A stretch of DNA of 64,000 bases from Rebecca billardiae RCC1528 (GCA_965240325.2 OZ251251.1:372001-436000); one strand, 5' to 3'; counted from the first letter of the stretch, positions 1 to 32,011 are shown. The notes: generated by a model not told the origin, from the letters alone. A program made the numbers and translations.

Positions 1-48
1 GTAGAAAGCGTCGTCGTCAGCAACGCGTGTCACCGGCTCAGGCGCGCT

Positions 49-360
49 CGCATCCGCCAACACCGCCCGCCCGAGCGACGAGATGAGCAAGAGTTTGTGT
101 GAGAGTGCCAGCATCTCGCCGTCCCTGCAGGAGGGGAAGGCGCACGCGAGCCCGCGCGGGCGCGCATGCACGTCGTCGTCGTCGTAGTGATCGTCGCCAT
201 CGTCAGCACCGCGCGTCTGCCGCGTGCCCGCATCCGCCAACACCGCCTGCACGAGCGACGAGATGAGCAAGAGTTTGTGTGAGAGTGCCAGCATCTCGCC
301 GTCCTTGCAGGAGGGGAAGGCGCACTCGAGCCCGCGCGGGCGCGCATGCGCGTCGTCATC
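49..360. repeat. Direct duplication of about 130 bp with exact 180-bp spacing
   Basis: CGCATCCGCCAACACCGCC...GAGATGAGCAAGAGTTTGTGTGAGAGTGCCAGCATCTCGCC...GGGCGCGCATGC occurs at ~49-180 and ~229-360 with few mismatches. Confidence 0.9.
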
Positions 361-701
361 CTTGTCGGTATCACATAATATTCTGATCGATCAGCTGATG
401 CTGATGATCGACATGCAGCATATGATGCGCGCTTGTGAAGCCGCTACGACGAAGTCGTCAGCACCGTGTCCGTGTCCGTCACATCGTCGTCGATGACGCG
501 TGGGGTCGCGAGCGCTGTGCCAAGGGCGGTGCTGTGCGCACTTGCAGCTGCGCCTGCATGACGAGGATATGCGCTGCTGCTGATGACGCACCGGCAAGAC
601 GACTCCTCGCCCGCCGCGGCCATACTGACGTGCCAACACCGCCCGCTCGGCGGCCGCGTGATGCGTGCGGCGTGCTGACGCCGCGGCAAGCGCGGTCGGC
701 G

Positions 702-25535: not shown

Positions 25536-26597
25536 TCACTTGATGTACTTGTTGAGGAACCTCTTGTGGAAGTCCGTGCGCAGCGTGTCGTTGATGAAGG
25601 AGGGCTCCGCCTTGGTGGGCGCGCGCGCCTGGTTTCGGAACACGACGTCGTCGTCCCAACGGCGCTTCACGTTGAAGGAGGACGCGGCGGCGGCGGCGGC
25701 GCCCGCGCCCGCGCCCGCAGCGGGCTGCACGAGCGGGTTCGAGTGCAGGATCGACTCCTCCGTCTCGGCGGCCGCCTGCTCCTCCGCCTCCGCCGCTCGG
25801 CGCGCCGCCTCGTCCGCGCGCTCCTTCTTGATGCGCTCGAGCTCTCGCATCAGCTCCTCCTCCTCGTCCTCCTCGTCCTCCTCCTCCGAGGAGGAGGCGT
25901 CGGACTCGGAGGCGGCGCGCGCGTCCGCGGCGTCACCCTCCACGCGCCCCGCACCCGCGGCGTGCGCCGCCGACGACGCGGGCGCGCGCGCCGAGCGCAC
26001 CGCGGCTGCGGCCGGCTCGTGCGTGGGCGCGTGGTCCGCGTCTGCGGGGTCGAGTAACGCGCCCCAAGCGCCGCCGCCCTGGGGCGCGGCCTCGGCTGCG
26101 GCGGCGAGGTGTCCGCGCGCGGAAGGCGGGGCGGGTACGTGAGACGGACGCAGTGCCCGGCGCGGCGGCCGCGCGCGCGCGCCGTGCGCACGCACCGTCG
26201 AGCACGCTGAAGTCGAGCATGCCTTGCTCGGAGGCGGCGGCAGCATGGCCGCCGCGCCGCCGCTTGCGCGTGTGCTCGCCCTCGCGCGCCTCGAGCTCGC
26301 GGCGCAGGTCGCGCCGGGCGACGTCGTCGGCCGACCCCTGCCCCTGCTGCCGGTGCTTCACCGTGAGGTGCGCGGGCAGCTCCTTGGCCGAGAAGGCCGT
26401 GCGCGGCGCCACCCAGCGATTGCCTGACTGCGAGTCGCCGCCGCGCGCCGGGTTCCAGGTGGCTGTGGGCGCGGGGCGAGGGTGGGGCACGCGCGCGGCC
26501 GGTCGGGTGCCGCGTCGGGTGGCGCGCGCAGCACGCGCGCGACGCGCCGCGTGTGGGCGCGCGAGGATGAGCGCGCACGTCGGTGGGCGGTCGTCAT
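25536..26597 (-). CDS. CWC15: Spliceosome-associated protein CWC15
   Basis: Spliced N-terminus MTTAHRPTWNPARGG (intron 26463-26578), AKELPAHLTVKHRQ, and C-terminal FNVKRRWDDDVVFRNQAR...FINDTLRTDFHKRFLNKYIK. Confidence 0.95.
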
Positions 26598-26652
26598 GCT
26601 GGCTGGCTGAGCAGGAGGGCGCGAGGCGGGTGCCCTTGCAAGGCGGTCCGGG

Positions 26653-28845
26653 CAAGGGAGTCAAGGGTGCCCGCGCCCCAGTGGCGCGCTCGGCGGATGT
26701 TGGGATACACCTTTTTGCCCGCGGCCCTGCGGCGGCGGCGGCGATGGCGTGCTCCGCTGGCGGGGCGAGCGCACGGGGCACGGCGCTGCGGGCGCGGATG
26801 TGCCCGCGAAGCCGGCGCGTGCGGACGGGCTGTTGCGGGAGAGCATCTGGCGCCCTCCTGCGCCGCGCGACTTGCGCCACGCCTCTTTCGCCTCGGCTCA
26901 GAGCAGCGCGCACGCACGCGCCGCCTCAAGGCCAGCCTTGCCGCGCCGCAGCCGACCGCGCGCGCGCCGTGCGCGGCGTGGTCGGGAAGGAACGGGCGCT
27001 GCTGCCGGGCGAGATGGCGACGTCATAGGCGCACGCCATGCCGCCCCGCCACGCCTTGACGAGAGTGTCGTCGGTCCGTTTGCACGCCTTTTCGACTTGT
27101 CACAAATGGTGTGCACTGCCTCGCGGTCGTGACCGTTGTCGGGACGATCATTGAGACACAGAACAGTGCCAGACGGGCACGCGGGCTACTCTTACATGAA
27201 TGTTCATCACCGCGTGGTCATGTAGAAGTGCTGGGTGCGACGCTTTCCTCGCGCTGATGCTCTTTCATCATCTTCTTCGAGCTCAGGTCTGGCTTCAGGC
27301 ACGGCAAGAAATCAGCACTCGTCAACAGCTGTGCGGATCCGTTCTCGTGCTCTTTTGCGGCGCCGCGGGGCGGCATGGCGTGCGCCCATGACGTCGCCAT
27401 CTCGCCCGGCAGCAGCGCCCGTTCCTTCCCGACCACGCCGCGCACGGCGCGCGCGCGGTCGGCTGCGGCGCGGCAAGGCTGGCCTTGAGGCGGCGCGTGC
27501 GTGCGCGCTGCTCTGAGCCGAGGCGAAAGAGGCGTGGCGCAAGTCGCGCGTCGCAGGAGGGCGCCCGATACTCTCCCGCAACAGCCCGTCCGCACGCGCC
27601 GGCTTCGCGGGCACATCCGCGCCCGCAGCGCCGTGCCCCGTGCGCTCGCCCCGCCAGCGGAGCACGCCATCGCCGCCGCCGCCGCAGGGCGCCGGGCAAA
27701 AATCTGTATCCCAACATCCGCCGAGCGCGCCACTGGCAAGGGAGTCAAGGGTGCCCGCGCCCCAGTGGCGCGCTCGGCGGATGTTGGGATACAGATTTTT
27801 GCCCGGCGCCCTGCGGCGGCGGCGGCGATGGCGTGCTCCGCTGGCGGGGCGAGCGCACGGGGCACGGCGCTGCGGGCGCGGATGTGCCCGCGAAGCCGGC
27901 GCGTGCGGACGGGCTGTTGCGGGAGAGTATCGGGCGCCCTCCTGCGACGCGCGACTTGCGCCACGCCTCTTTCGCCTCGGCTCAGAGCAGCGCGCACGCA
28001 CGCGCCGCCTCAAGGCCAGCCTTGCCGCGCCGCAGCCGACCGCGCGCGCGCCGTGCGCGGCGTGGTCGGGAAGGAACGGGCGCTGCTGCCGGGCGAGATG
28101 GCGACGTCATGGGCGCACGCCATGCCGCCCCGCGGCGCCGCAAAAGAGCACGAGAACGGATCCGCACAGCTGTTGACGAGTGCTGATTTCTTGCCGTGCC
28201 TGAAGCCAGACCTGAGCTCGAAGAAGATGATGAAAGAGCATCAGCGCGAGGAAAGCGTCGCACCCAGCACTTCTACATGACCACGCGGTGATGAACATTC
28301 ATGTAAGAGTAGCCCGCGTGCCCGTCTGGCACTGTTCTGTGTCTCAATGATCGTCCCGACAACGGTCACGACCGCGAGGCAGTGCACACCATTTGTGACA
28401 AGTCGAAAAGGCGTGCAAACGGACCGACGACACTCTCGTCAAGGCGTGGCGGGGCGGCATGGCGTGCGCCTATGACGTCGCCATCTCGCCCGGCAGCAGC
28501 GCCCGTTCCTTCCCGACCACGCCGCGCACGGCGCGCGCGCGGTCGGCTGCGGCGCGGCAAGGCTGGCCTTGAGGCGGCGCGTGCGTGCGCGCTGCTCTGA
28601 GCCGAGGCGAAAGAGGCGTGGCGCAAGTCGCGCGGCGCAGGAGGGCGCCAGATGCTCTCCCGCAACAGCCCGTCCGCACGCGCCGGCTTCGCGGGCACAT
28701 CCGCGCCCGCAGCGCCGTGCCCCGTGCGCTCGCCCCGCCAGCGGAGCACGCCATCGCCGCCGCCGCCGCAGGGCCGCGGGCAAAAAGGTGTATCCCAACA
28801 TCCGCCGAGCGCGCCACTGGGGCGCGGGCACCCTTGACTCCCTTG
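26653..28845. mobile_element. Inverted dimer of a ~1.1-kb fold-back transposon (P-element-like), forming a 2.19-kb palindrome
   Basis: Copy 1 at 26653-27736 lacks the last 25 bp; copy 2 at 27737-28845 is inverted; termini CAAGGG...CCCTTG; 7-bp TSD GTCCGGG at 26646-26652 and 28846-28852. Confidence 0.9.
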
Positions 28846-28956
28846 GTCCGGGTGACTTCACCGCACACTGTTCAACTTGGTCCGGCCCTAACCTCGAGCA
28901 AGTCAAAACCGCCACGCACGGACCCGCGGTTTCGCTTCATTCATTCGTCGCGAAAG

Positions 28957-31900
28957 ATGGCGTCGCGCGGCGTTGTGCGCGGCGCGCGCGGGGAGGCGGC
29001 GGCGCGGGCGGAGGACGAGGACGAGGAGGAGCTGGACGAGGAGGACGCGGAGGCGGACCCGAGCCTCGCGGCCTCCGACGACTCTGAGGGCAGCGACGGC
29101 GAAGAGACCAGCTCGTCCGCGCCGACCGAGCCGCGCGCGGCCGACAGCGCGCCGCGGCCGGTGCCGCGCGTGATGCGCTCGCTCTTCAAGGGGCGGCCGG
29201 CGACGGTGTGGTTCGACTACGCGCCGTTCCTCGACATGGAGCGGACGGAGGGCGCGGGTGCGCGCCGCCGCCATCGCGCGGCCCATCTGCCGGCCGCGGC
29301 GCGCGCGCGCGCGCACGCGCCGCGCTCACCGCCGCCACCTCTCCGCGCGCACGCGGCGCGCGCAGAGCGCGTGCACGAGCTGTCCGACCCGAGCGTGCTC
29401 CCGCTGTACTTCAAGGCGGAGAAGCACATCAACTGCATCGCGCAGTCGCTGAAGCGCAACGGCTTCCGCCGGCTGCTCAAGGGCGCGTCGTACAACGTGT
29501 TCTGGGGCGCGCACCTCTCGGAGAAGGGGCTGCGCCGCTCGGTGCCGCACCAGTACGTCAACCACTTCCCGGGCTCGTACGGGATCGGGCGGAAGGACTA
29601 CCTGTGGAAGAACATCTCGCGCATGCAGCGCGACCACCCGGCCGAGGTGCGCGCGCGCCGCCGCCCGCCTCGCGCGCCCGCCGCCGGCCGCGCCGCTCAG
29701 CCGCCGGCCGCGCGCCGCGCTCCGCCGTGCCGCGCAGTACGACTTCGTGGTGCGCAGCTACCTGCTCCCGCCCGACCGCGAGCTGCTCGAGCGCGACTTT
29801 GTGGAGGGCGAGCTGTACATTGCGAAGCCGCCCGCGAGCGCGGAGGGGCGCGGCATCCGTCTGCTCTCGCGCGCGGAGCAGCTGCCCGCGCGCGAGCGTG
29901 CGGCGGTCGTGCAGCGGTACATCCACAACCCGTACCTGATCGGGGGGAAGAAGTTCGACCTGCGCGTGTACGTGTGCGTCACCTCGTTCGACCCGCTGCG
30001 CGTGTACGTGTACGACGAGGGCCTCGGCCGCTTCGCCACGCACGCGTACTCGGGCTCGTCCTCGCGCGCCAACCTGAAGGACAAGCTCGCGCACCTGACC
30101 AACTACGCGCTCAACAAGCGCTCGGACGAGTTCGTGCGCAACACGGACGCGGAGCGCGACGCGGAGGGCTCCAAGTGGTCGCTCTCCGCCGTGTGGCGCC
30201 ACCTCGCCGCGGAGGGCCACGACGTGCCCGCGCTGCGCGCGCGCATCCGCGACATCGCGGTGAAGACGATGATCGCGGTCGAGCCGTCCGTCGTCTCCAA
30301 GCTCAACCAGTGGTGCTACAACCGCGCCTCGCCCTTCGAGCTGTTCGGCCTCGACATCCTGCTGGACGCACAGCTCAAGCCGTGGCTGATCGAGGTGAAC
30401 GTGGCGTGCTCGCTCTCCTCCTCCTCGCCGCTCGACCGCCGCGTGAAGCACGCGCTGCTGACGGACACGTTCCACCTGCTGGGCGTCGTCCCGTTTGAGC
30501 GCAGGCCGCAGCACGGCGCGCAGCAGCAGCACCCAGGGGGCGCGGACGAGGAGGGCGGCGGCGGCGGCGGCGGCGGCGGGGGCGGGGGCGGGGGCGGGGG
30601 CGGGGCGAGGCGGCACGCGGGCGGGCGCGTGGCGCTGAGCGCGCGCCCGCCGCCCGAGCGCCGCGCCAAGGGTCGCAACGTCTTTGAGCTGCGCGCCACG
30701 CCGCTGTGCGCGCTCGGGCCGGACGAGTGGGAGCTGGTGATGGCGGCCGAGGACGAGCTCGGGCGGCGCGGCCACTGGGCGCGCGCCTACCCCGTGTACG
30801 GCGAGGCGGAGGTGGCGCGCTACATGCGCCTCTTCTCGTGCGCGCGCTACCGCAACACGGTGCTCGCCAAGTGGTGCGCGCAGCCCGACTGGCGGCTGCT
30901 CGCGCCCTTCCTCGCCGGCCCGCCGCCGCCACACGCCGCGCTCGTGCCGAGCGTGCCCGCGCCGCTCGGCGCGCCGCCGCACGCGGGCGCGGCCGGCCGG
31001 CGCGCGTCCGCGGGCGGTGGCGCGGCGTGCTGCTCGCGGCCCTCGACCAGCAGCAGCTCGGCCGCCACGCCGCGCGGGCGCGGCGCGGGCGCGTGCACGG
31101 GCGCGGGCGTGTGCACGGCGCGGCGCGCGAGCACGCCCGCGCGCACGGCAGGCGCGGGCGCCAAGGCGGCGCCGGCGCCGGCGGCTCGAACGACGCCCGC
31201 GCCCGCCGCCGTCGCCGCCGCTGCCGCCGGCACGCCGCCGCCGCAGCCGCGCGCGCCTGCCGCCGGCACGAGCGGCCCGCACTCCGCCGATGCGGCGGCC
31301 GAGCGCAGCCCGCCGCGCACGCTGCTCGACTTGTCGCCGCACGCGCCGCCCCCTGCGCTGCTCCGGCGCGCACCCTCCGAGGGCGGCAGCGCCGACGCCA
31401 TGCTCGCGGCGGCCGCGCGCTCCGCGCTGCGCGCCGCGCAGTCCGTGCCCCCGAGCGGCGCGCTGCGCTGGCACAGCCACACAGCGCCGCCGGGGCACAT
31501 GCACGCGGCCATGTCCGGTGTGCCGGGCGCGGGCGCCGCCCCGCACACGCGGCTCGTGCGGCCGCTCGAGCTGCGCGCGCGCGGAGGCGCGCGCGCGCCC
31601 GCGCCGGGCGGCGGCGGTGCGGCGGCGGTGGGCGACGTCGACCGGCTGCTGCGCAGGGCGACGGTGGGCGGCGGCGGCGGCGGCAAGGTGGGCGCGGCGG
31701 TGGCGACCGCTGCCGCGCCGCTCGGCGGCGTGCGCTGCGCGAGTGGCGCGGCGCCCTCGGCCGCGCACGCCCTCGGCGGCCGCGCGGGCGCGGTGCGCAC
31801 GCCGGCCGCCGCCGGCCGCGCGCTGCCGGCTGGCGCGTGGCCGCTGCACGACGGTGCAGGCGGGGCGGGCTCGCCGCGTATGCCAACCTCGCTGCACCCG

Positions 31901-32011
31901 TCGGCGGCGAGCGTGCCGTCGCCGCCCGCGCGCGTCGCGGCGGCAGGGGCCGGCCCGGCGGTCGTCGGCAGCGGCGCTACCAGCGCGGGATGGCGGGTTG
32001 GCTACTACTGA
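28957..32011 (+). CDS. Tubulin-tyrosine-ligase-like polyglutamylase (TTLL4/5-like)
   Basis: VNHFPGSYGIGRKDYL, YIAKPPASAEGRGI, VQRYIHNPYLIGGKKFDLRVYV, HLTNY and FELFGLDILLD...WLIEVN; intron 29647-29737 and a probable in-frame intron near 29258-29365. Confidence 0.93.

What the first reader, a model, noticed from the sequence alone, without database searches (positions are those of the whole stretch)
26646..28852. 2.2-kb palindromic inverted transposon dimer, bounded by a single TSD, inside the CWC15/TTLL bidirectional promoter
Seen: the structure is L-spacer-R'(minus 25 bp) | R-spacer'-L'. Arm polymorphisms show the two outer arms are the same end (GATACACCTTTTTGCCCGCGG) and the two inner arms are the other end (GATACAGATTTTTGCCCGGCG). 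One exact 7-bp TSD (GTCCGGG) flanks the whole dimer, and there is no TSD at the inner junction (27736/27737), so this is not a simple nested insertion. Removing it leaves only about 160 bp between the CWC15 and TTLL ATGs. Inference: it arose by hybrid-end/sister-chromatid transposition or by fold-back-driven strand switching. It could form nested hairpins or dsRNA between two conserved genes.
Basis: partly seen in the sequence, partly recalled or inferred. Interest (0 to 1): 0.8.

Follow-up and report, generated by a model that had tools for sequence, protein, structure and literature searches.

The report
Head-to-head double foldback transposon in promoter
Two identical copies of a 1.1-kb protein-less jumping element sit head-to-head as a perfect 2.2-kb palindrome between the start codons of a splicing gene and a tubulin-modifying gene. 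This family's ordinary habit of inserting into the tips of its own relatives explains the structure, so it is a curious but not a new kind of rearrangement.

Summary
Window 26653-27736 is the exact reverse complement of 27762-28845 (1084 nt, 100%). The 25-nt centre is the tip of the complete right copy, and one GTCCGGG duplication flanks the pair. The unit is a 1109-bp non-coding element with 403-bp terminal inverted repeats (TIRs). It has about 60 monomer copies in this 72-Mb genome, and 23 of 27 examined carry 7-bp target-site duplications (TSDs). The scan had already met this family on other DNA (s1-332103, s1-358077). The inner junction is unique in the genome. Both arms share a private base that 22 other young copies lack, so they descend from one copy.

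The hybrid-end route predicts a 32-bp tip stub that is absent. New family facts suggest ordinary routes:
- Relatives insert repeatedly into TIR positions 18-29.
- The 7 nt before the junction (positions 26-32) score in the top 3% as a family target.
- At least 8 element pairs abut through a shared TSD.
- Excision leaves P-element-like footprints.

Best reading (about 0.4): one copy nested into the tip of its twin, and the pair then moved using the two outer tips. Main rival (0.25): insertion into the shared TSD followed by a 32-bp deletion. An assembly artefact is unlikely but cannot be tested here. Interest is modest.

The parts
26646..26652 (.). Left copy of the 7-bp target-site duplication GTCCGGG
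   Evidence: The same 7-mer is the TSD of two other independent insertions of the family (L010, L023).
26653..27736 (-). Left copy: 1084 bp, inverted relative to the right copy, lacking the 25-nt tip of its inner TIR
   Evidence: repeat I1, 100% complementary to 27762-28845.
26653..27055 (+). Outer TIR of the left copy (403 bp, intact tip CAAGGG...)
27056..27358 (-). Spacer of the left copy (303 bp, lower G+C). It carries the private variant at 27356 (T on the plus strand, unit position 406).
27359..27736 (-). Inner TIR of the left copy, truncated to 378 bp (positions 403..26)
   Evidence: repeat I3.
27730..27736 (.). CCACTGG, TIR positions 32..26: the proposed 7-bp target of the nested insertion, with one copy retained
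   Evidence: Scores 3.02 bits in the family target matrix. That is the top 3.2% of window 7-mers and rank 35 of 1103 in the unit.
27737..28845 (+). Right copy: complete 1109-bp unit with both tips intact
27737..27761 (+). The 25-nt asymmetric centre of the palindrome, which is the tip of the right copy's inner TIR
   Evidence: It forms the loop of the predicted hairpin.
28140..28442 (+). Spacer of the right copy, with private A at 28142 (unit position 406; G in all 22 other young copies)
28443..28845 (-). Outer TIR of the right copy (403 bp)
   Evidence: repeat I2.
28846..28852 (.). Right copy of the TSD GTCCGGG
25539..26597 (-). CWC15 gene 5' part: ATG at 26597-26595, a very short first exon, and further exons at 25936-26430 and 25539-26246
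   Evidence: PF04889, E 1e-12 and 2.9e-45. The MTTAHR start is read. The splice sites are inferred.
28957..30700 (+). TTL-family gene 5' part, ATG at 28957
   Evidence: PF03133, E 2.9e-5 and 2.2e-67.

Best explanation
This is a composite of two sister copies of a non-autonomous, P/Galileo-like foldback element, built by two ordinary transposase reactions.

Step 1 (inferred). At an earlier site, one copy, most likely excised from the sister chromatid, integrated in inverted orientation into the TIR tip of an identical copy, at the 7-bp target CCACTGG (TIR positions 26-32). That produced: host(1-1084), guest(1-1109), then a 32-bp host stub.

Step 2 (inferred). The transposase then paired the host's outer tip with the guest's outer tip instead of the host's own tip 32 bp further out. 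The 2193-bp pair moved as one unit into the preferred target GTCCGGG, 55 bp upstream of the CWC15 ATG and 104 bp upstream of the TTL-gene ATG. This made the single 7-bp duplication.

The stub and the second copy of the inner target stayed behind. That explains why the inner junction shows an intact tip, no duplication, and a partner that is 25 nt short.

What is shown: the anatomy, the family's 7-bp TSDs, the tip hot zone, the target-like 7-mer, and the common descent of the arms. What is inferred: the order of events and the donor site.
For: - Exact palindrome and single TSD.
- About 60 monomer copies (126 tips); 7-bp TSDs in 23 of 27 copies examined.
- The inner junction is unique in the genome.
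- Both arms share the private base at unit position 406.
- The right side of the junction is an intact transposon tip, as expected of a strand-transfer joint.
- The 7 nt on the other side score in the top 3.2% of 7-mers as a family target. About 10 of 23 true targets score that high.
- Three independent ordinary nested insertions lie in the same 15-nt zone of this TIR: L005 and L037 at positions 18-24, and L036 at positions 23-29, each with a stub and, where readable, a 7-bp duplication.
- The outer target GTCCGGG is used by two other insertions.
- Maize macrotransposons show that elements can move on alternative end pairs (PMC3260210).
Against: - No donor trace was found: no second copy of the inner junction, no 32-nt tip stub preceded by non-family sequence, and no stub next to a tip footprint. 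These were exact-match searches, and 26 tip matches on the last contigs could not be listed.
- No other element in this genome was shown to have moved on a guest's tip.
- The target-score argument rests on a matrix built from only 23 sites.
- A 2-nt overlap (GG) between the junction and the end of the TSD fits an end-joining origin equally well.
- The transposase is unidentified.
Confidence: 0.4

Rival explanations
1. In-situ double insertion followed by a small deletion. A monomer was already at this site. Its sister copy hopped, inverted, into the 7-bp TSD next to it, giving a perfect palindrome with a 7-nt centre. A 32-bp deletion (25 nt of one tip plus the shared TSD copy) then followed. 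The deletion arose either by repair after transposase cleavage at the inner tip, or by the centre-break type of palindrome stabilisation.
For: Pairs arranged tip, 7 nt, tip (two elements sharing one TSD copy) occur at 8 or more sites, against 1 control match for the whole pattern. Two involve this family: L023, whose shared TSD is the same 7-mer GTCCGGG, and L024. The deletion junction has a 2-nt microhomology, GG. No donor site is needed, which fits. Stabilising central deletions of long palindromes are established (Cunningham et al. 2003, listed in the references of PMC3315005).
Against: On this route the deletion end point inside the TIR is arbitrary, so its landing on a top-3% target 7-mer inside the nested-insertion hot zone would be coincidence. 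One deletion boundary must fall within 0-2 nt of the other copy's tip. None of the 8 abutting pairs shows such a deletion.
Confidence: 0.25
2. Joined cleaved ends. The transposase cut the inner tips of two sister copies, or of one copy whose end then folded back. One end kept its full tip, and the other was trimmed to position 26. The ends were ligated, or hairpin-capped and copied, and the dimer was integrated by its two outer tips. In one variant, the 25-nt offset is the length of a P-like staggered cut.
For: Excision in this element group is P-like. There are 55 short residues with 7 to about 20 nt of each tip (2 controls), none longer than 45 nt, and only one hit at 65-95 nt. The 15-bp residues are flanked by perfect 7-bp repeats in 5 of 10 cases, plus L003 after removal of a later insert. 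So the cut on the non-transferred strand lies inside the element. On one strand, the junction joins tip position 1 to position 26 of the complementary strand, which is the geometry of a staggered end closed on itself.
Against: The stagger length is not measured, and the longest retained tip is about 20 nt, not 25. Ends held in a transposase complex are poor end-joining substrates. The target-like 7-mer would be coincidence. No second example exists.
Confidence: 0.12
3. Replication or repair strand switching in situ. A nascent strand entering a resident monomer switched to the other TIR, copied the unit backwards to position 26, and then jumped back to the start of the element.
For: The TIRs of this family do exchange. 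In three direct segmental duplicates on contig 10, the flanks and TIRs are collinear but the 303-bp spacer is inverted (L007 versus L012 and L013). The arms are identical. A 2-nt microhomology lies at the return jump.
Against: The first switch must occur within the 57 tip-proximal bases where the two TIRs are identical. The return must land exactly on the first base of the element, which has odds of about 1 in 1000. The known TIR exchange inverts the spacer and does not duplicate it.
Confidence: 0.05
4. Hybrid-end or sister-chromatid transposition: one end from each sister chromatid, inserted into the element's own TIR.
For: It would explain the sister identity of the arms and the use of a target-like 7-mer.
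Against: Worked through on the sequence, this route leaves the host's last 32 bp (target copy plus 25-nt tip) between the outer tip and the flanking TSD. In the window the outer tip abuts GTCCGGG directly.
Confidence: 0.03
5. Assembly or read artefact: the true locus holds one monomer.
For: 100% arm identity is what an artefact would give. There is no second haplotype contig and no external sequence to compare with. Reads are not available here.
Against: Fold-back chimeric reads join a fragment to its own complement. They would return to the left flank, not continue into the correct right flank with the matching TSD, and they would not leave a 25-nt asymmetric centre that starts exactly at a transposon tip. 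The locus lies inside a contig of a 41-contig assembly. Mixed flip isomers give no assembly path from one TIR directly into another tip.
Confidence: 0.08

Closest known systems
Galileo and other foldback-like members of the P superfamily (Drosophila)
   Same: Long TIRs of hundreds of bp, 7-bp TSDs, many protein-less two-TIR copies, and TIRs that recombine and generate structural variants (PMC3573991). Here: 403-bp TIRs, 7-bp TSDs in 23 of 27 copies, a weakly palindromic target, spacer flips, and footprints that keep both TSD copies plus tip nucleotides.
   Different: No autonomous copy with these tips was found. The only P-type hit in the genome is one ORF with a weak PF21787 match and no TIRs or TSD. 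The host is a very GC-rich alga, not an insect.
Double Ds and Ac/Ds macrotransposons of maize
   Same: One copy sits inside or next to an identical copy in inverted orientation, and transposition can use alternative pairs of ends (PMC3260210).
   Different: Double Ds keeps both host ends and both copies of the inner 8-bp duplication. Here the host's inner tip and one target copy are gone, and the guest's tip serves as the outer end. The superfamily also differs (hAT versus P-like).
P-element double insertions, flanking deletions and hybrid element insertion
   Same: Local hops into or next to a resident copy, and deletions that start exactly at an intact element end.
   Different: The predicted hybrid-end product carries a 32-bp stub that is absent here.
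Centre-break stabilisation of long palindromes (Cunningham et al. 2003, cited in PMC3315005)
   Same: A perfect long palindrome acquires a small asymmetric central deletion. Here the centre is 25 nt and asymmetric.
   Different: It applies only if the undeleted pair once existed at this site, which is not shown.
Inverted-repeat transposon loci that act as silencers (maize Ack1; abstract of PMC13635294, seen)
   Same: An inverted duplication of a transposon that could give hairpin RNA against its own family.
   Different: No transcript or small-RNA data exist here, and each monomer already has 403-bp inverted arms.

Membership tests
P superfamily / Galileo-like foldback elements | 7-8-bp target-site duplication | tested here: met
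   Identical 7-bp repeats flank 23 of 27 copies. The dimer is flanked by GTCCGGG.
P superfamily / Galileo-like foldback elements | Long terminal inverted repeats with CA...TG tips | tested here: met
   403-bp TIRs at 97-98% identity, tips CAAGGG...CCCTTG.
P superfamily / Galileo-like foldback elements | Staggered excision that leaves both TSD copies plus terminal nucleotides of both TIRs | tested here: met
   55 tip-to-tip residues of 45 nt or less, against 2 controls. Only one at 65-95 nt. The 15-bp residues are flanked by perfect 7-bp repeats in 5 of 10 cases, plus L003.
P superfamily / Galileo-like foldback elements | Autonomous partner with the same tips encoding a THAP/P-type transposase | tested here: inconclusive
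   All tip pairs listed are about 1.1 kb apart. One ORF has PF21787 at 31.9 bits, with no TIR, no TSD and no PDB match. PF21789 found nothing.
Non-autonomous (MITE-like) DNA transposon | No coding capacity, many near-identical copies, TIRs and TSD | tested here: met
   Six ORFs of the unit have no Pfam match. There are about 60 copies, the young ones 99-99.8% identical.
Simple nested insertion (double-Ds type) | The guest is flanked on both sides by host sequence and by a duplicated target | tested here: not met
   Left of the guest is CCACTGG, and right of it is the outer TSD GTCCGGG. No host stub is present. Contrast L005 and L036, which show both.
Hybrid-end / sister-chromatid transposition product | The product retains the host's terminal fragment and a target duplication next to the inverted copy | tested here: not met
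   The 32-bp stub is absent. The derivation is in the full report.
Composite moved on alternative ends (macrotransposon type) | A single TSD of the family's length around the whole composite, and intact outer tips | tested here: met
   7-bp GTCCGGG on both sides. Both outer tips are intact, and there are three tips in all in the window.
Composite moved on alternative ends (macrotransposon type) | A donor site with the part left behind | tested here: not met
   No stub was found by exact-pattern searches.
Fold-back inverted duplication by replication template switching | Junctions at arbitrary positions with microhomology, and no dependence on transposon tips | tested here: inconclusive
   A 2-nt microhomology is present, but one side of the junction is exactly a transposon tip.

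The most novel reading that the evidence does not exclude
The 25-nt offset is not accidental. It marks where this family's transposase cuts the second strand: a P-like stagger, but of about 25 nt instead of 17. On this reading the dimer is a fossil of a cleaved end that closed on itself or on its sister and was then integrated.
Probability: 0.08. Interest if true: 0.6.

Novelty: new member of a known kind. Interest (0 to 1): 0.3.

Why it matters
In itself this is a structural variant of an active non-autonomous transposon family, of a kind known from double Ds, macrotransposons and P-element double insertions. Two things make it worth a note. First, it is a perfect 1.08-kb-arm palindrome lying within 55 bp and 104 bp of the ATGs of two conserved genes. 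It therefore offers a natural test of how this alga tolerates long palindromes and promoter disruption. Second, following it up showed that this element group behaves like P elements: 7-bp duplications, tip-retaining footprints, and homing to the tips and TSDs of resident copies. It does so in a very GC-rich alga where no matching transposase has yet been tied to it.

Tried and rejected
- Autonomous partner. All tip pairs listed are about 1.1 kb apart. Fourteen unpaired tips were fetched and turned out to be old or truncated monomers.
- P-type transposase. There is one weak PF21787 ORF without TIRs or a TSD, nothing for PF21789, and no PDB relative.
- A second tip family (GATAGCCGT) was located, but its loci could not be fetched.
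- Allelic contig for this locus: none.
- Metagenome scans with the left flank and with the tip: nothing.
- Donor stub searches: nothing. The single hit (C12:13724) is a normal copy with a CpG-to-CpA change.
- Other insertions at TIR positions 26-32: none. Two near-matches are old degenerate copies.
It was redone from the locus files.
- Rejected as explanations: a simple nested insertion, hybrid-end insertion, an assembly path through flip isomers, and two independent insertions from different source copies (ruled out by the shared private base).

Full report
**1. Observation**

The repeat finder reports arms 26653-27736 and 27762-28845: 1084 nt, 100% complementary, 25 nt apart.

- The right half, 27737-28845, is a complete 1109-bp unit: a 403-bp TIR, a 303-bp spacer of lower G+C, and a 403-bp TIR.
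- The left half is the exact reverse complement of that unit without its first 25 nt.
- GTCCGGG lies at 26646-26652 and at 28846-28852.
- The 7 nt left of the inner junction are CCACTGG, so no duplication brackets the right copy alone.
- The window holds exactly three tips: two pointing right (26653, 27737) and one pointing left (ending at 28845).
- The two TIRs of a unit differ at 10 positions, the first at position 58 from the tip.
- The neighbours are a Cwf15/Cwc15 gene on the minus strand and a TTL-family gene on the plus strand. Their ATGs are at 26597 and 28957. Without the insert and one TSD copy, 159 bp would separate them.

**2. The family**

The window is contig 35 (372001-436000) of a 72-Mb, 41-contig, very GC-rich eukaryotic assembly. 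Earlier notes of this scan call the organism a haptophyte-type alga. They had already described this 1.1-kb foldback family on other windows (s1-332103, s1-358077).

- The 32-nt tip occurs 126 times (67 forward, 59 reverse; none in the control), nearly always as pairs 1109 bp apart. That makes about 60 copies.
- Young copies are 99.0-99.8% identical to the query.
- Of 27 copies examined, 23 have identical 7-bp flanking repeats.
- The symmetrised target is weakly palindromic, roughly S-C-Y-S-R-G-S.
- GTCCGGG is also the TSD of two other insertions (L010, L023).
- Six ORFs of the unit have no Pfam match, so the element is non-autonomous.
- No longer element with these tips was found. Fourteen unpaired tips were all old or truncated monomers.

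**3. The dimer within the family**

The inner junction is unique in the genome (with a shorter pattern).

Both arms carry A at unit position 406 (window 28142, and its complement at 27356). All 22 other young copies compared have G there. The arms therefore descend from one copy, or were homogenised after they joined. They are not two independent arrivals from different sources.

**4. How this element group behaves**

(a) Excision footprints.
- The pattern of a tip 7-mer, up to 50 nt, then the complementary tip 7-mer occurs at 55 sites, against 2 for the control.
- Lengths peak at 15-20 nt and stop at 45 nt. The next length class, 65-95 nt, has one hit, a tandem repeat.
- Ten 15-bp residues were shown with their flanks. 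Five have perfect 7-bp direct repeats on both sides. A sixth (L003) does too, once a later insertion is removed.
- Excision therefore leaves both TSD copies plus 7 to about 20 nt of each tip. This is the signature of a P-element-like staggered cut. It is not the signature of enzymes that hairpin the flanks.

(b) Homing to resident copies.
- Two tips separated by exactly 7 nt, meaning two elements sharing one TSD copy, occur at 8 or more sites. The pattern as a whole had 39 matches against 1 for the control.
- L023 and L024 are such pairs that involve this family.

(c) A hot zone in the TIR tip. There are three ordinary nested insertions:
- L005: a family copy at TIR positions 18-24, with the duplicated target and a stub.
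- L037: a sister family at the same target.
- L036: a third family at positions 23-29, with a 7-bp duplication.

(d) TIR exchange. Three direct segmental duplicates on contig 10 have collinear flanks and TIRs, but the spacer is inverted in one of them.

**5. Routes to the dimer**

Any route must explain five things: an intact tip at the inner junction, a partner 25 nt short, no inner duplication, one outer TSD, and identical arms.

Route C: nesting, then movement on the outer tips.
- If a copy integrates inverted at positions 26-32 of the host's TIR, the result is host(1-1084), guest, then a 32-bp stub (a target copy plus the 25-nt tip).
- Four tip pairs are then usable. The pair made of the host's outer tip and the guest's outer tip delimits exactly the 2193 bp seen here. 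Its insertion elsewhere gives one new 7-bp TSD.
- Every junction is then a normal strand-transfer joint.
- Support comes from the target score. The 7-mer at positions 26-32 scores 3.02 bits in a matrix built from 23 family TSDs. That is the top 3.2% of all window 7-mers and rank 35 of 1103 in the unit, while about 10 of 23 real targets score that high.
- It also lies next to the three nested insertions of point 4c.
- Against it: no donor stub and no second copy of the junction were found. Those searches were by exact match, and 26 tips on the last contigs were never listed.

Route B: insertion into the shared TSD, then a 32-bp deletion.
- The first step has 8 or more precedents, one of them at the very same 7-mer.
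- The product would be a perfect palindrome with a 7-nt centre. Such structures are known to be stabilised by small central deletions (Cunningham et al. 2003, as cited in PMC3315005).
- The junction has a 2-nt microhomology, and no donor is needed.
- On this route, however, the target-like 7-mer and its position in the hot zone are coincidences. One deletion boundary must also sit within 2 nt of the other copy's tip.

Route A: cleaved ends joined or hairpin-capped.
- On one strand the junction links tip position 1 to position 26 of the complementary strand. This is what a 25-nt staggered end closed on itself would give, and point 4a shows that the cut is staggered.
- The stagger length is unknown, and the longest retained tip is about 20 nt.

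- I worked through this route: one end from each sister chromatid, with the target in the element's own TIR.
- It gives full copy, inverted truncated copy, a 32-bp stub, and then the flank.
- The stub is absent, so this route fails as stated.

The fold-back strand-switch route.
- It needs a first switch inside the 57 tip-proximal bases that the two TIRs share.
- It also needs a return landing exactly on base 1 of the element.

Artefact.
- Fold-back chimeric reads return to the same flank and have a symmetric centre. Here the correct right flank and a matching TSD follow, and the asymmetric centre begins at a tip.
- I could not inspect reads, and there is no allelic contig and no metagenome match.

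**6. Weighing**

- Route C gains about 13-fold from the target score and gets tip exactness for free. It loses perhaps 2-3-fold for the missing donor.
- Route B starts from a somewhat higher prior, because abutting pairs are commoner than tip-zone nestings.
- My estimates are: C 0.40, B 0.25, joined cleaved ends 0.12, artefact 0.08, in-situ strand switching 0.05, hybrid-end 0.03, and the rest unassigned.
- One point is secure regardless of route. This is a real-looking double copy derived from one progenitor, and the family's own insertion habits suffice to explain it.

**7. Comparison with known systems**

- By anatomy and behaviour the family works like Galileo-type members of the P superfamily: 7-bp TSDs, long TIRs and dynamic TIRs (PMC3573991).
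- Membership is not established, because no P-type transposase shares its tips. The only hit is a 1317-residue ORF with PF21787 at 31.9 bits, with no TIRs and no TSD.
I could not locate or test it.
- The dimer resembles double Ds and macrotransposons (PMC3260210), with the difference that a guest tip has replaced a host tip.

**8. Consequences (inferred, not tested)**

- The right copy can still excise alone. The left copy lacks one tip and cannot.
- A single strand across the centre folds into an uninterrupted hairpin with the 25-nt centre in the loop region (-213.8 kcal/mol, z = -33).
- Read-through transcripts would be double-stranded over 1084 nt. Every monomer already offers 403-bp arms, however.
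- Only 48-55 bp (CWC15 side) and 104-111 bp (TTL side) of native upstream sequence remain next to each gene.

**9. Verdict**

The finding is a new member of a known kind of composite transposon, and its interest is modest.

Noticed in passing
L007 (C10:821394-822502) versus L012 (C10:846662-847770) and L013 (C10:802207-803315): These are three direct segmental duplicates carrying the same insertion (same TSD and flanks). Flanks and TIRs are collinear, but the 303-bp spacer is inverted in L007. This is a flip by exchange between the 403-bp TIRs.
   Followed up: partly
Genome-wide; nearest case C35:365274-365302, 6.7 kb before the window start: About 55 short residues carry 7-20 nt of each CAAGGG-type tip. 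Many are flanked by perfect 7-bp direct repeats. They are excision footprints of P-element type, and none is longer than 45 nt.
   Followed up: partly
C7:3930113, C8:3313795, C8:3358118, C16:726494, C19:1635304, C25:796296, C30:459381, C34:577660: These are pairs of CAAGGG-tip elements that abut through exactly 7 nt. New insertions re-use the TSD of a resident element.
   Followed up: partly
L005 (C12:1763967-1766167), L036 (C17:953173 onward), L037 (C19:1635317-1636499): Nested insertions of this and two sister families lie at TIR positions 18-29. L037 is a 1183-bp composite (about 50 nt of a host tip, a complete sister-family element, then 24 nt of host tip) flanked by one TSD.
   Followed up: partly
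L034 (C14:300847-301931): An older copy ends 24 nt short of its tip, almost the same point as the dimer's left copy. It runs into an AT-richer sequence with TTCGCCGAA repeats, and no tip follows within 8.5 kb. Probably a large foreign transposon, unexplained.
   Followed up: no
L027 (C11:142628), L028 (C30:857151), L018 (C3:4524366): These copies lack their last 5 nt and join the same foreign sequence (ATTCTATGATTTAACGACAC...). About 250 bp of it is shared between two loci with different left flanks, and no TSD lies at the far boundary.
   Followed up: partly
L046 3843-7796, minus strand (C21:1532842-1536795): A single 1317-residue open frame has a TNP-like RNase H N-terminal domain (PF21787, 31.9 bits). 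It has no TIRs and no TSD. It may be a stationary or domesticated P-like transposase.
   Followed up: partly
L044 (C5:3756702-3758092): A 1391-bp variant of the unit has a 294-bp internal direct duplication (unit 1-947 followed by 654-1109). It is inserted into the tip CAAGGGT of another element.
   Followed up: no
window 30900-31950: A stretch of 84-87% G+C lies inside the open frame that continues the TTL-family gene. It is translated as Ala/Arg/Gly/Pro-rich low-complexity sequence.
   Followed up: no
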